From Ylistrum balloti (Eukaryota), in assembly GCF_031769215.1 (NCBI RefSeq), contig NW_026781979.1, forward strand, positions 682,001-746,000: a stretch of DNA of 64,000 nt. The letters are read 5' to 3'. Under the pieces are notes generated by a model. The model saw nothing but the letters and a program-made list of their open reading frames with translations, ran no database searches and was not told the DNA's origin. The position numbers and the translations under genes were made by a program. This document shows positions 5,201 through 11,200 of this stretch, piece after piece. How positions within the stretch are numbered: position 1 is the stretch's first letter; each line of letters starts with the position of its first letter.

Positions 5201-8200
5201 AAAGATACTTACATAACTGTATTCTGTATTTACTGTGACAAAAAAATAGATTCTTAAATCTCTTAACTAAGTGATAGCTGAACATAAAGTGTATCAGTCT
5301 ATACGTTCAGCAGTTTTATCTTAATACAAACTTACATGGTATTCAAATTCCCATGATGGCTCAGTCAGTTAGAGCGTTGGCCTATGTAGCTTCAAGTGAA
5401 GATTTGAGGTGTGAGTTGTAACATTCCATACCCATGATAGTTTGTGTTAATAGGAAAGCTGAGAAATTGACCAGTCTGTGCAGATCTGGTTGAGTCCTTG
5501 TGCTAAAAACTTTATTCTAATTACTTTGGATGGCATGTGGCAGGCCTCCTGTATGTTGTTCAGTGAGGTAGCAAACAGGTACTACACGGAGACCCTGTCT
5601 ATAATGATCCTAGCTGTTCATGGAGTGATAAAACCCAACAAACATACAAATGAAATTTCCATTGAATTGTATTCAAGAGTATCATCACCTGATAAATGTG
5701 AAATGATTTGGTTGTGGAGGTGTAACCTATCATGTTTATGTATAACATTAGAAATGCTTCCATGTTATTGGTTAATGTTTCAGGACCTACAAAGAGGCAT
5801 GTCAGGTTCTGGACAGGCTTCACCTAGTGTTGGTTCTAAGGTAAGGTCACTCTAAAATGACTGTTATTATATAACCTATGTATGGTTTTTGTGTATTAAC
5901 TTTTGCATTGATGACGAGGATACTACAAAATGTGGACATTTTTGAAGGTGATGCTTTGTGATTCTCCTTAAAGTATTTTGAAGTAATATCAATGTTCGGT
6001 TTTATTTTAATTGCCTTTACTTTGTTAATGAGTTCATACTTGCTTTCTGTACTGTAGACAGTTTGATTTCAAATTAATTCAATCCTTAGTGTCTTAAAAC
6101 AACCTAGCATTCTAAGAGCCAGAGGGTGATTTTGTTGACTTTCCATTTCTCATCTAACATTAGATGAAAATTTCAAAAACATTAAAAATCTTGTAATGTA
6201 GTAGCCACATTTGCAGTATCTTTGTGTATAAGATTGATATGATTGCTAGCCAACTATGAATACTGGTTTTGTTAACAAGTAGTGGGATGTACAATTTCTT
6301 AATCCGACTACTCACAGTACATATATATATATATTTTGGTAATTTATCAAGAATTTTAAAACAATTTTTATGCTGATTATCATATTGATAGTTGGTCACA
6401 TTCACTTTCTACTCATTTGAAAAATACAATACTGAACTGAAATACAGGCAGTTACGGAAAAGTAGAAATGAAAAATTTGTTGATGTAATATTGAAAATTA
6501 ATGATAAATGCATTTCGTGTATTTGAAATTTGAAATTGTACAATCATGCAGTGTATTTATTTCTTGATTGACGTGATTTGTTTATTGATACACAGCACAA
6601 CAACATTGAACAGCATGTATCATACGTTAGCTGTAGTGGAACTTACATATAGATAAATTTGGCAGCTCAGATTTGTGTTGAAATAAGATTTAAGATTTTA
6701 TGAGAAATTTTATGAATTGTTCATTTTTAAAAACTGTTCATGGAAAAAAAAAATTATATGTATGTTCCAAGGTTGAGGTAGACCTAATTTGAATACTTTA
6801 CACAAGTATGTAAAACCCATTTATGTTTGCCTTTGGTGAAGTGTTTAACAACTGTATGCTTTGCACTGATAGCCATACTGGACAACATGAAATGTTCCTT
6901 AATTATAACAGTTCTCTTTGTGATGATGATGGAGGTAAATCATTTGATAACAAAATCATTCACATATCACCCATATTGAACATTTGTTTTATCTTTATTG
7001 TTCCATAAGCAATCACTAAAGCAATTGTTTAAATATAAGGAACATTTCTTATTGATACAGTATCTTAATATGAACAATTAGTATATACCTTTATATATTG
7101 CATGATTGGTACTGCAAACATAACACACAATTCAAGCGAAAAACCAAGGTTTAGTTTTGCTGAAAATGATTGCTTACATTTGGCTTTTGTTAGAACTAGT
7201 TAAATTTTTAACCTGTTTCTGTGATCTAGACACCAATTAGTCGAGATGAGTTCAACTCGTCAGCCTCATCAGCATTTGATGACATAGCTGCACAGAATAA
7301 GAAGGTGGGTCAGAACACGTTCAATTTCTGGTAGTAATTCGTTGGAGCTCCTTAATTGAGCATTAAGTCTAGCAATGTAGTTACATACCGTGGTATGTAT
7401 TGACATTGTCCCCATATGATATTTTATGGTTTGTTTTGTTGTCACAGAAAATTTACTCCAGCCTACACAATCCATCTTCTATCTTATCTGTCGATACTTA
7501 AAAATTAAATCTGAAATCATAATAGAAATGCTTGGTGTAATGTGACATGTAAAAATAGAAAAGAAAAAGACATTGTTGATTCTTTCAGTAATTGTATTTG
7601 AAATAGTAGTCACTTCTAAATGCATGACTAAGAAATACTTTGTATTAGGTGAAAGTTTATCAATTAAACTGCATGAAGCCATTATATGAACACATATTTT
7701 AATCCTGCATATTGCATGTATGAACTGTACATGCATAAGAGCACAAACAATAGTTAGATTGCTTTTAGATAATGCTTAGGGAAATATTGTCATGCATTGA
7801 CAGAAGATTAGAATTCACTGTTAAATAGCTTTGGAGTTGTGATGTGATCTTATCTAGGATCAAAAGACAAAAAAAGCTATTTTATTGATTGGATACATCT
7901 TCAGCTTTTGAAATGATTGAATATTTGATTTCCATCCATTTTCAACTTGACATTAGATAATACTTCCGATATCATTCATTTGAAGTAAATATACATAAAC
8001 AGGAAACTTGTATGCAAATAGAAACAAGGCATTTGATCTGTTGTTTCTTTGTACTGGTCTATAGAGCTGTTTTGTCGTTTAGACTAAGACTTTTAAATTG
8101 ACTTTCACACTGTTAACATTGTTGAACAACTTTTGGCTTTTTCACAATATCATTAGACACCTGGCAGTGTGGATGAGTTATCTGCCTTTGATGACATAGC

Positions 8201-11200
8201 AGCACAGCAGAAAGCAAAGGACCGACCGCAGTCACCTCTTAATATACCTACAGATGCAGGTAAATTTAAGTGTGATTATAATATACCTACAGATGCAGGT
8301 AAATTTAAGTGTGATTATAATATACCTACAGATGCAGGTAAATTTAAGTGTGATTACAATATACCTACAGATGCAGGTAAATTTAAGTGTGATTATAATA
8401 TACCTACAGATGCAGGTAAATTTAAGTGTGATTATAATATACCTACAGATGCAGGTAAATTTAAGTGTGATTATAATATACCTACAAATGCAGGTAAATT
8501 TAAGTGTGATTATAATATACCTACAGATGCAGGTAAATTTAAGTGTGATTATAATATACCTACAGATGCAGGTAAATTTAAGTGTGATTATAATATACCT
8601 ACAGATGCAGGTAAATTTAAGTGTGATTATAATATACCTACAGATGCAGGTAAATTTAAGTGTGATTATAATATACCTACAGATGCAGGTAAATTTAAGT
8701 GTGATTATAATATACCTACAGATGCAGGTAAATTTAAGTGTGATTATAATATACCTACAGATGCAGGTAAATTTAAGTGTGATTACAATATACCTACAGA
8801 TGCAGGTAAATTTAAGTGTGATTACAATATACCTACAGATGCAGGTAAATTTAAGTGTGATTACAATATACCTACAGATGCAGGTAAATTTAAGTGTGAT
8901 TATAATATACCTACAGATGCAGGTAAATTTAAGTGTGATTATAATATACCTACAGATGCAGGTAAATTTAAGTGTGATTATAATATACCTACAGATGCAG
9001 GTAAATTTAAGTGTGATTATAATATACCTACAGATGCAGGTAAATTTAAGTGTGATTATAACAAACCTACAGATGCAGGTAAGTTTAAGTGTGATTAAGG
9101 ATATTTATAGTATTTCACAAATAAAATTTTTTGGTCCACAATTATTTGATTTGGTCTTTCAAATGGTCTTTTGTCCATGGTCCAATCCATTCGCAATGTA
9201 TCGTTCTTATCTGTTTTCAGTTCTTGTTATTACTATTTTTTCCTGGATTCTTCTTAAAGCATTACAGACATGTTTAATTTGCATTTGAACATCTGTCACC
9301 ACTTTTCTTAAGAAATACAATGTGTACTAGAGGAACACATAATAAATATGAAACACTTTTAATTAACAGGAAATTCATACAACCTGCAGGTCTTTCCTCA
9401 GTGATAACTTCATCATATGAATTGTCGGGAAGATTTCTTTTACAGTTTGAATTTTTATATGCAGTCAAACTTCATTGTTTTGAAAATTAAGGGACTAGCA
9501 AAAAAACTTTGATACATCGAGACTTGTTTCATTTCTGGTGGGTTATAACAATGTTTTCATGTTCAATGTTATAGTTGATGACAAAACATTTTTACCTGAA
9601 CAAAGACAATAAATACCAAAACACAAAATTAAATGAAAGTAGACATTATTTTCTTCTAATCAAACATCTTCATTCATGAAAAAAAAACTTTAAATAGACA
9701 TCAACAAGAAATCAACATTATGTGATTACATTAAGATTCATGCCATCATGTTACACAGTATACTGGTTATGTATTTTATGGATTGATTTTAAATAAAATG
9801 ACACACAGCATTATAGTGGTCTTCACGTGCTACAGTAATTGTTTTAAGACTGATACATAAACAAAGAAAGAAACTTAATATTATAATGTATTCTGTCCAG
9901 AAATGACAGGACCAGACTCGCACATCTTAGCTCATAAAAATTACAAAGGTGTTTGCCGATGTTCTGACTACAATTTGTCTGAATCAGCATGAGAACACAT
10001 GATTGACAGATAAATAACAGTGTTTCTCATTCTTTCTTGCTTAAAACTGAAAAGTGACACTTTGGGAATAAGTGAAATCATCATACAAGTGTTCAGGATT
10101 TCTCCTGATTTTTTCATAATTCCGTAAATTAGACCTTACTCTACGCTAACGCTGCAACGGCAGTGGTGAAAATCACACAACATCCCATTATCTTTGATTA
10201 AACATCATGACTTGTAAGTAAGCAATTAAACTTTAGTCTGTGTCCAGTCATTAATAAACTTTGTAACACAGGACCAATGACTGCATGCTGTTGTTATCCC
10301 ATTGTCAGTTAGCACTCTTTGTTGAAAGGTGTGAAATTATGTTGTGGGACAAAATACTTGTACAGAGTACAGGTAAAAATGATCTGTCCAAATCATGAGG
10401 TGTCAATGACTGTGTTATATCATAGCTAAAGTTCTGTGAAAAACATTGATACATTGGAAAGTTTGATTTATAAAACTTTTGATTCCTAAAGGGGTTAGTC
10501 AGTAGTAATATATAGGAATGAATGTGTGACCAGACAAAAAAATTGATACCTTGTGAAATTCAAATCATTAATGTTCAGTTTATAGAAGTTTGACTGTATA
10601 TATGCCGTGCTGAGATGTTGGAAAGTTGTCATTAATACTGAAATAATTTGAAGGCATATCCTGCCTTTTTCTACCATATAGATACATTCAATTGTTTGTG
10701 AAAATGTTCACATGTGTACAAAATTGATCCTACTGCTATGAATTAATTGGTTTTTTTGTTTTTGTTTGTTTTGCAATCAATTTATTTGTCAACAATTTTG
10801 GTTCCAGATGCTGATGGTTTGCTGAGTCAAGCATTACTTATGGGGAACTTTGAGGCAGCCGTGGATATTTGTCTGAGTGAGGACAAGATGGCTGAAGCAA
10901 TCCTCCTAGCTATTGCAGGTGGTCCAGACCTTCTCAGTCGTACACAGAAAACATACTTCACAAAAAACAAAAGCAGTTTAGGCCGGGTATGTTTTATTTA
11001 CGAACAGTTTAGCTTGTCAGTAAGTGGAAAATCTTGTTATATTTTCTGATGTAGTTCAGTGTCAGGGAAAATAAGAATATGTAAAGCATTCTTCACTTTC
11101 ATTCTATGAATTATAATACAATTTACAGCATTTATGATTTTATGTTTACAGTTGATATCCACAGTGGTTACACACAACTGGTCACATATTGTGCAGACTT

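What the first reader, a model, noticed from the sequence alone, without database searches (positions are those of the whole stretch)
8241..9098. Minisatellite that multiplies a splice donor in frame: a possible length-tunable Sec31
Seen: the 39-bp unit comprises the last 19 nt of the exon (NIPTDA+G) plus the first 20 nt of the intron, so the junction CAG|GTAA is repeated 22 times (donors at 8260 + 39n, up to 9079). 39 is a multiple of 3 and the exon frame has no stop until 9096, so every donor joins exon 10808 in frame, adding 0-21 copies of [13 protein letters not shown] (up to 273 aa, one Cys each). Established: the first unit corresponds to the normal Sec31 sequence just before the DGLxxQALL helix. 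Inference: a VNTR-encoded ladder of splice isoforms in an essential coat protein; allele length could act as a splicing or protein-length rheostat. I do not recognise this arrangement as described for SEC31, but no search was run.
Basis: partly seen in the sequence, partly recalled or inferred. Interest (0 to 1): 0.85.

Follow-up and report, generated by a model that had tools for sequence, protein, structure and literature searches.

The report
Splice-donor minisatellite in scallop Sec31
A scallop's Sec31 gene carries a real 22-copy repeat of the stretch spanning one exon end and its splice donor, a known kind of repeat in which splicing normally uses the first donor, so it is probably a tolerated intron oddity and not a protein-length dial.

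Summary
A 39-bp unit is repeated 22.0 times at 8240-9097, with 98% identity. It starts 20 nt before the end of a Sec31 exon, so CAG|GTAA recurs 22 times in frame, and the frame stays open to 9096.

The window is Ylistrum balloti (saucer scallop), assembly GCA_031769215.1. The only annotated protein, XP_060064136.1, is rebuilt exactly by splicing the first donor (8260) to 10808. The orthologous junctions in Argopecten irradians and Mizuhopecten yessoensis are single-copy, so the array is specific to this lineage.

This kind of repeat is already described: amphioxus "mirages" and human F7, LMNB2, PDGFA, CBS and IFI6. In those genes the first donor is used, or at most the first three. This scan had also noted such arrays elsewhere in this genome.

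No protein in the searched databases carries the repeat peptide. I could not reach any transcript data. The in-frame isoform ladder therefore remains possible but unsupported.

One real uncertainty remains. Only the last unit has the perfect CAG|GTAAGT donor, and perfect downstream sites did compete in F7 minigenes.

Verdict: a new member of a known kind, of modest interest.

The parts
8157..8259 (+). Sec31A-like exon 14 ([34 protein letters not shown] plus the first base of the next codon). Its last 20 nt are the start of repeat unit 1.
   Evidence: The exact reconstruction of XP_060064136.1 from L001 gives one unique GT-AG solution per intron. The exon is 100% identical to residues 545-578 of P0174.
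8240..9097 (+). 39-bp minisatellite of 22.0 copies. Each unit is 20 nt of exon end plus 19 nt of intron start.
8260..8265 (+). First donor, CAG|GTAAAT. This is the site used in the annotated mRNA.
   Evidence: L001 13665 = window 8260. The U1 duplex energy is -8.3 kcal/mol, which ranks 9th of the 26 donors compared.
8299..9045 (+). Twenty reiterated CAG|GTAAAT pseudo-donors at 39-nt steps (8299 to 9040), all in the exon phase.
9059..9097 (+). Last and most diverged unit. The exon-like part reads AACAAACC (NKPTDA) and the donor at 9079 is CAG|GTAAGT, a 9/9 match to the consensus.
   Evidence: The U1 duplex energy is -11.8 kcal/mol. Argopecten also has GTAAGT at the orthologous donor.
9098..10807 (+). 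Unique remainder of intron 14, ending in a pyrimidine tract and CAG.
10808..10986 (+). Sec31A-like exon 15 ((D)[22 protein letters not shown]...SSLGR), the start of a conserved alpha-solenoid helix.
   Evidence: It aligns to yeast Sec31 residues about 508-649 in 2pm6, 2pm7 and 4bzj.

Best explanation
This is a minisatellite specific to the Ylistrum lineage, of the exon-intron-boundary type known as a 'mirage' or F7-IVS7-type repeat.

How it arose (inferred): slippage or unequal exchange amplified a 39-bp segment spanning the exon 14 / intron 14 junction of the Sec31A-like gene. This added 21 extra copies (819 bp) to the start of the intron.

How it is spliced: the 103-nt exon is defined by its acceptor and the first donor downstream of it (8260). 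That is the junction in the annotated mRNA. The other 21 donors behave as silent or nearly silent pseudo-sites inside the intron.

Why it persists (inferred): the period is a multiple of three, the frame is open, and the site lies in a loop of Sec31 that varies in length and is poorly conserved. Occasional use of a downstream donor would therefore give an in-frame insertion, with no frameshift or early stop. That makes the array cheap to carry. The in-frame property explains tolerance, not design.

Shown here: the array, its phase, its absence from two related scallops, and the first-donor junction in the RefSeq model. Inferred: how the array arose, and that the pseudo-donors are silent in vivo.
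For: - The array and its phase are confirmed.
- The window is identical to Y. balloti GCA_031769215.1 over all 18,711 compared bases.
- XP_060064136.1 is rebuilt exactly with 25 GT-AG introns, and intron 14 runs 8260-10807.
- The spliced product has the same length as in other scallops at this point.
- A. irradians and M. yessoensis have a single junction, short introns (about 680 and 480 bp) and no tandem repeat there.
- CAG|GTAAAT is a good donor by this gene's own standard. Five of its 25 used donors lack +5G, and its U1 duplex energy is above the median.
- Precedents: in F7 only the most upstream of 5-9 identical donors is used; in LMNB2 and PDGFA only the authentic donor is used; in IFI6 and CBS the authentic donor plus two more are used (PMC1557585; PMC4526556). 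Amphioxus mirages do not disturb splicing (PMC3087553, PMC3902484).
- The loop between LLGY and DGL ranges from 38 to about 350 residues in 75 Sec31 proteins, with a median of 100.
- No database protein carries the repeat peptide.
Against: - No transcript data could be examined.
- The RefSeq model is a weak witness. It is the only isoform annotated, and it also omits a conserved 75-nt cassette exon (7230-7304) that relatives include. Isoform sampling in this species therefore looks thin.
- The last unit has a perfect CAG|GTAAGT donor. In F7 minigenes, perfect-consensus pseudo-sites took 70-90% of splicing, though at 37-74 nt and not 819 nt downstream.
- With a 31-bp unit (CBS), two downstream donors are used. 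A 39-bp unit is close to that.
- Predicted RNA accessibility does not favour the first donor.
Confidence: 0.68

Rival explanations
1. A few downstream donors are used at a low level, as in IFI6 and CBS. The gene would then make minor in-frame Sec31 isoforms with 13, 26 or so extra residues in the loop, with no particular function.
For: All donors are identical in sequence, phase and predicted accessibility. The IFI6 and CBS arrays use the first three donors. Exons of 142-220 nt would still be an ordinary size. In-frame products escape nonsense-mediated decay (established knowledge).
Against: F7, with a 37-bp unit close to the 39 bp here, shows no use of downstream sites. No such isoform is annotated or present in the protein databases.
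Confidence: 0.2
2. The last donor (9079), which is the perfect consensus, is used substantially. Much of the Sec31 protein would then carry a 273-aa insert of 21 repeats of 13 aa in the alpha-solenoid loop.
For: Only unit 22 has CAG|GTAAGT, with a U1 duplex energy of -11.8 against -8.3 kcal/mol. Perfect pseudo-sites competed strongly in F7 minigenes. GTAAGT is also the Argopecten donor, so it may be the ancestral one. A goby Sec31A model carries 13 repeats of 16 aa in the same loop, and cephalopod transcripts carry 3-4 diverged SPLxIPT repeats right before the helix.
Against: It would need a 922-nt internal exon with 21 good donors inside it. The RefSeq model does not use it. The exon-like part of unit 22 has diverged from the conserved NIPTDA to NKPTDA, as expected for intronic sequence. 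Mizuhopecten has GTAATG, so G at +5 is not securely ancestral. No protein with the repeat was found.
Confidence: 0.06
3. The array has a function. Either allele length tunes Sec31 length through a full isoform ladder, or the 22 U1-binding sites act in the intron as a splicing enhancer or silencer or as protection against premature polyadenylation.
For: The frame is open through all 22 units. Of five distinct variants, three are synonymous in the exon frame, but that is far too few to test. The array sits in an essential gene, at a region that is already alternatively spliced in relatives.
Against: Two of the three forward frames are open across the array, and one period in three is divisible by 3, so openness is cheap. 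The array is absent from two related scallops. Its near-identity points to recent expansion and not to conservation. The same genome is reported to hold many such arrays in other genes.
Confidence: 0.04
4. The copy number is an assembly artefact, with the array expanded or collapsed in the assembly.
For: Only one assembly was available. The sequencing technology could not be established.
Against: The array sits inside a 2.08-Mb contig. It carries an ordered pattern of unit variants and a diverged end unit, as real arrays do (the same edge pattern is described for amphioxus). Artefacts usually collapse repeats rather than create them (general knowledge).
Confidence: 0.02

Closest known systems
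Human F7 intron 7 37-bp VNTR (Borensztajn et al. 2006, PMC1557585)
   Same: The first monomer spans the exon-intron boundary, so the authentic donor is followed by identical pseudo-donors. The unit length is almost the same (37 against 39 bp). It too lies in a gene that matters for viability.
   Different: F7 has 5-9 copies and a period not divisible by 3, so most pseudo-sites shift the frame. Here there are 22 copies, all in frame and open, and the last one is a perfect consensus site. Use of only the first donor is shown by experiment in F7 and is only inferred here.
Human IFI6 (6-16) minisatellite providing multiple splice donors (Turri et al. 1995, as cited in PMC1557585 and PMC4526556)
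   Same: The array reiterates the donor about 26 times. According to PMC4526556, use of downstream units gives transcripts that encode different protein isoforms.
   Different: From my memory of Turri 1995, which I could not open, the unit is much shorter (12 nt) and in frame. Only the first three donors are used. Transcript evidence exists there and none exists here.
Amphioxus 'mirages' (Adh3, globins, TnC, PGBD5; PMC3087553, PMC3902484)
   Same: These are minisatellite-like tandem duplications of exon-intron boundaries in an invertebrate. Units are 10-160 bp, copy number is unstable, the edge units escape homogenisation, and splicing is reported as normal.
   Different: They were described in cephalochordates and involve both 5' and 3' boundaries. 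This one is in a bivalve, at a donor, and has an unusually long and homogeneous array.
Human CBS intron 13 VNTR, LMNB2 100-bp and PDGFA 81-bp boundary repeats (listed in PMC1557585)
   Same: The exon-intron junction is reiterated 10-20 times.
   Different: CBS uses two extra donors, while LMNB2 and PDGFA use none. Unit lengths differ, and no in-frame ladder is reported.

Membership tests
Exon-intron-boundary minisatellite ('mirage' / F7-IVS7 type) | Head-to-tail array of a unit of roughly 10-160 bp | tested here: met
   Period 39, 22.0 copies, 98% identity, no indels.
Exon-intron-boundary minisatellite ('mirage' / F7-IVS7 type) | The first unit contains an authentic exon end plus its splice site, so the site is reiterated in the intron | tested here: met
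   The exon ends at 8259, inside unit 1 (8240-8278). The junction is fixed by exact reconstruction of XP_060064136.1 and by co-linearity with orthologues.
Exon-intron-boundary minisatellite ('mirage' / F7-IVS7 type) | A derived, lineage-specific expansion of a junction that is single-copy in relatives | tested here: met
   A. irradians (L002) and M. yessoensis (L003) have one junction and no tandem repeat there.
Exon-intron-boundary minisatellite ('mirage' / F7-IVS7 type) | Copy number varies among alleles (VNTR) | not testable with these tools
   Only one assembly or haplotype was available.
Exon-intron-boundary minisatellite ('mirage' / F7-IVS7 type) | Normal splicing uses the authentic, most upstream site | tested here: inconclusive
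   The only RefSeq model uses 8260, but no transcript reads could be examined, and the model omits a conserved cassette exon.
Minisatellite that yields in-frame multi-donor isoforms (IFI6 type) | Unit length divisible by 3 and the reading frame open through the units | tested here: met
   39 = 3 x 13. The frame is open from 8157 to 9095.
Minisatellite that yields in-frame multi-donor isoforms (IFI6 type) | mRNAs spliced from downstream units are observed | tested here: inconclusive
   No protein of 172-548 aa or of 673-2142 aa in the 5.8-billion-protein collection carries the repeat. The cluster of XP_060064136.1 has a single member. Short-read assemblies could not resolve such isoforms in any case.
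Sec31 (COPII outer coat) | WD40 propeller followed by an ACE1 alpha-solenoid, with orthology to Sec31A | tested here: met
   The exons in the window are identical to XP_060064136.1, 'protein transport protein Sec31A-like'. The closest relatives are scallop Sec31A proteins. The alpha-solenoid part matches yeast Sec31 structures 2pm6, 2pm7, 3mzl and 4bzj.

The most novel reading that the evidence does not exclude
The reiterated donors are really used. Part of the Sec31 mRNA would be spliced from downstream units, most plausibly units 2-3 or the perfect-consensus last unit. This would give Sec31 isoforms with inserts of 13 to 273 aa in the alpha-solenoid loop. Because copy number varies between alleles, the length of this COPII cage subunit would then differ heritably between individual scallops.
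Probability: 0.08. Interest if true: 0.7.

Novelty: new member of a known kind. Interest (0 to 1): 0.3.

Why it matters
If the pseudo-donors are silent, this is one more natural example of a splice site chosen by position among 22 near-identical candidates. It comes from a mollusc, whereas the experimental cases cited here are from mammals and the other invertebrate cases from amphioxus.

It has one useful natural feature. The 21 upstream sites carry +5A and the single last site is a perfect consensus 819 nt downstream. That sets position against strength in one native gene.

If downstream donors are used, it would be an unusual case of a VNTR setting the length of an essential coat protein. 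Either way, the question can be settled with one RT-PCR.

Tried and rejected
- **Repeat peptide in public proteins.** I searched 5.8 billion proteins in two length classes. The full-length class used P0174 region 520-640. The fragment class used the 313-aa ORF, region 1-73. Neither found a protein with the repeat.
- **More scallop outgroups.** Look-ups for the Pecten maximus isoforms and two Mizuhopecten isoforms found no record. Argopecten and Mizuhopecten X1 worked.
- **RNA structure as a way to pick one donor.** The unpaired probability of the 9-nt site is about 0.3 for all 22 donors and 0.24 for the last, so it does not discriminate.
- **A UACCU/AGGUA hairpin over the donor.** It can form in all three scallops but is no better than shuffled sequence, with z-scores from -1.07 to 0.02.
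- **Selection on the repeat codons.** There are only five distinct variants, three synonymous and two not. That is too few to test.
- **Fold of the hypothetical insert.** AlphaFold2 gives one strand per unit, with pLDDT 76 and pTM 0.78. I reject this as evidence, because AF2 is documented to give confident but unrealistic beta-solenoids for perfect repeats (PMC11795689).
- **Transposon origin of the unit.** There is no copy elsewhere in the window or in the rest of the gene. I did not test genome-wide.
- **Papers.** Turri et al. 1995 could not be opened. No paper naming the assembly was found.

Full report
**What is in the sequence**

Tandem Repeats Finder reports one array at 8240-9097, with period 39, 22.0 copies, 98% matches and no indels. 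A pattern search finds exactly 22 copies with at most 3 mismatches and none elsewhere in the 64-kb window, against 0 expected by chance.

Sixteen units are identical. Units 4, 15, 16 and 17 share a T>C at unit position 1, and unit 7 has one G>A. The last unit has three changes: TAATATACC>TAACAAACC (two changes) and GTAAAT>GTAAGT. The flanks show no similarity to the unit.

The array begins 20 nt before the end of an exon. CAG|GTAA therefore recurs at 8260+39n, up to 9079. The exon frame (8157 onward) stays open to TAA at 9096.

**Whose gene it is**

A conserved exon of the window recovered Sec31 proteins. A second search with one of them listed mollusc Sec31A proteins. Comparing these with the window put scallops on top.

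Exon by exon, the window is identical to XP_060064136.1, 'protein transport protein Sec31A-like' of Ylistrum balloti. The genomic record of that protein is GCA_031769215.1, contig JAUZWB010000275.1. It matches the window at all 18,711 compared bases.

I rebuilt the protein exactly from the DNA. It takes 26 exons and 25 introns, and each intron has a single GT-AG solution. Intron 14 runs from window 8260 to 10807. The annotated mRNA therefore uses the first of the 22 donors.

This protein is the only isoform on record for the species. The model also leaves out an intact 75-nt cassette exon at 7230-7304, which the Pecten, Argopecten and Mizuhopecten models include. The absence of further isoforms is therefore weak evidence.

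**Is the array ancestral?**

No. The orthologous junction in Argopecten irradians (L002) reads GATGAAG|GTAAGT and is single-copy. Its intron is about 680 bp and has no tandem repeat. In Mizuhopecten yessoensis (L003) the junction reads GATGGAG|GTAATG, is single-copy, and sits in an intron of about 480 bp.

All scallop proteins have the same length here: SPL(S/N)IP(T/S)D(A/E/G)[11 protein letters not shown]. The 21 extra units (819 bp) are therefore a derived expansion in the Ylistrum lineage.

The first units keep the conserved coding sequence, NIPTDA. The last unit has drifted to NKPTDA, as expected for a copy that is not translated. The last unit alone has +5G, like Argopecten, while Mizuhopecten has +5T. 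G is a plausible but not secure ancestral state.

**Would the donors work?**

Within this gene, 20 of 25 used donors have +5G and five do not. A simple U1-duplex calculation gives -8.3 kcal/mol for CAG|GTAAAT, which ranks 9th of the 26 sites compared. CAG|GTAAGT scores -11.8, second best of the 26.

All 22 sites are therefore credible donors. Predicted local RNA structure does not distinguish them: the unpaired probability is about 0.3 for all and 0.24 for the last. A small UACCU/AGGUA hairpin over the donor can form in all three scallops, but it is no better than shuffled sequence.

**What is known about such arrays**

The arrangement is a described class. Borensztajn et al. 2006 (PMC1557585) studied the human F7 intron 7 VNTR, a 37-bp unit whose first monomer spans the exon-intron boundary.
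- Only the most upstream of 5-9 identical donors is used.
- Pseudo-sites improved to a consensus value of 91 still do not compete.
- Perfect-consensus pseudo-sites do compete, taking 70-90% of splicing.

The same paper lists other cases. IFI6/6-16 has an authentic donor followed by 25 pseudo-sites, and the two nearest are also used. CBS uses two extra donors. In LMNB2 and PDGFA only the authentic donor is used. PMC4526556 confirms that the three IFI6 mRNAs encode different isoforms.

In amphioxus, tandem duplications of exon-intron boundaries are called 'mirages'. They are reported in Adh3, globin, TnC and PGBD5 genes. They vary in copy number, their edge units escape homogenisation, and they do not disturb splicing (PMC3087553, PMC3902484).

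Earlier notes of this scan report several such arrays in other genes of this same scallop genome. I did not re-examine those loci. I did read and confirm the papers behind the comparison those notes make.

**Where the insert would fall in the protein**

The exon after the array aligns to yeast Sec31 residues about 508-649 in 4bzj numbering, in the alpha-solenoid. In chain 3mzl_B the same helix starts 34 residues earlier than in 2pm6. From memory this is a loop-deletion construct, which I did not check.

Among 75 long Sec31 proteins, the stretch between LLGY and the DGL helix has a median of 100 residues and ranges from 38 to about 350. A goby model (XP_072310454.1) has 13 repeats of 16 aa there. 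Cephalopod proteins predicted from Logan contigs of 4-7 kb, probably transcripts, have three or four diverged SPLxIPT-type repeats immediately before the helix.

The loop clearly tolerates length change. This is why an in-frame leak from a downstream donor would probably be harmless.

**Search for direct evidence of use**

No protein carrying the repeat peptide exists in the 5.8-billion-protein collection, in either length class searched. Short-read assemblies cannot resolve a 39-nt periodic repeat, so this is weak negative evidence. No transcript reads were reachable with these tools.

**Reading**

The best-supported account, at about 0.68, is a young boundary minisatellite that lies functionally in the intron. 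The 103-nt exon is closed at the first donor.

The in-frame, open-frame property is better seen as the reason the array is tolerated than as a design. One period in three is divisible by 3, and two of the three forward frames are open over the array.

The rivals are:
- low-level use of the next one or two donors, as in IFI6 and CBS (0.2);
- substantial use of the perfect last donor (0.06);
- a real function, as a rheostat or as an intronic U1 platform (0.04);
- an assembly artefact (0.02).

The one feature I cannot dismiss from sequence alone is the perfect donor at 9079, given the F7 minigene result.

**Fold prediction**

AlphaFold2 on the hypothetical read-through protein gives a regular one-strand-per-unit model with pLDDT 76. 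AF2 is documented to do this for meaningless perfect repeats (PMC11795689). I give it no weight.

**Verdict**

This is a new member of a known kind, and the same kind was already noted by this scan elsewhere in this genome. Interest is modest. A single RT-PCR would settle it.

Noticed in passing
window 7230-7304 (+): There is an intact 75-nt cassette exon ([25 protein letters not shown], with a CTAG acceptor and an AAG|GTGGGT donor). It is a paralogue of exon 8157-8259, since both begin TPxSxDE...[11 protein letters not shown]. It is included in the Pecten maximus X3, Argopecten X1 and Mizuhopecten X1/X2 models but is missing from the only Y. balloti RefSeq model. It looks like an old tandem exon duplication next to the new minisatellite.
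   Followed up: partly
window 8250-8264; L002 12627-12644; L003 16347-16364: The conserved Ile-Pro codons (AUACCU) can pair with the donor (AGGUA) to form a 5-7 bp hairpin over the 5' splice site in all three scallops. The fold is no better than shuffled sequence, with z-scores from -1.07 to 0.02.
   Followed up: yes
P0045 (XP_072310454.1, Eucyclogobius newberryi) residues about 640-830: The goby Sec31A model carries about 13 tandem repeats of 16 aa (PSEEPSQDPFTEILQA) in the same loop, just upstream of DVDGLITQALL. This is an independent repeat expansion at the same place in Sec31. Whether it is truly coding was not checked.
   Followed up: no
P0195 and P0198 (cephalopod Sec31 proteins from Logan contigs of 4-7 kb) residues about 620-690: Three or four diverged copies of an SPLxIPT-type motif lie directly before GAEGLLGQALL. 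The motif is the counterpart of scallop [10 protein letters not shown]. This suggests an older repeat of the same exon end that is now expressed.
   Followed up: no
L002 18496-20175 and L003 18706-19337: The Argopecten and Mizuhopecten Sec31 loci share an intronic tandem repeat of about 325 bp (GGGCGGGGCCAAAAAGGGTC...). It has no counterpart in the Y. balloti gene and is probably a transposon-derived satellite.
   Followed up: no
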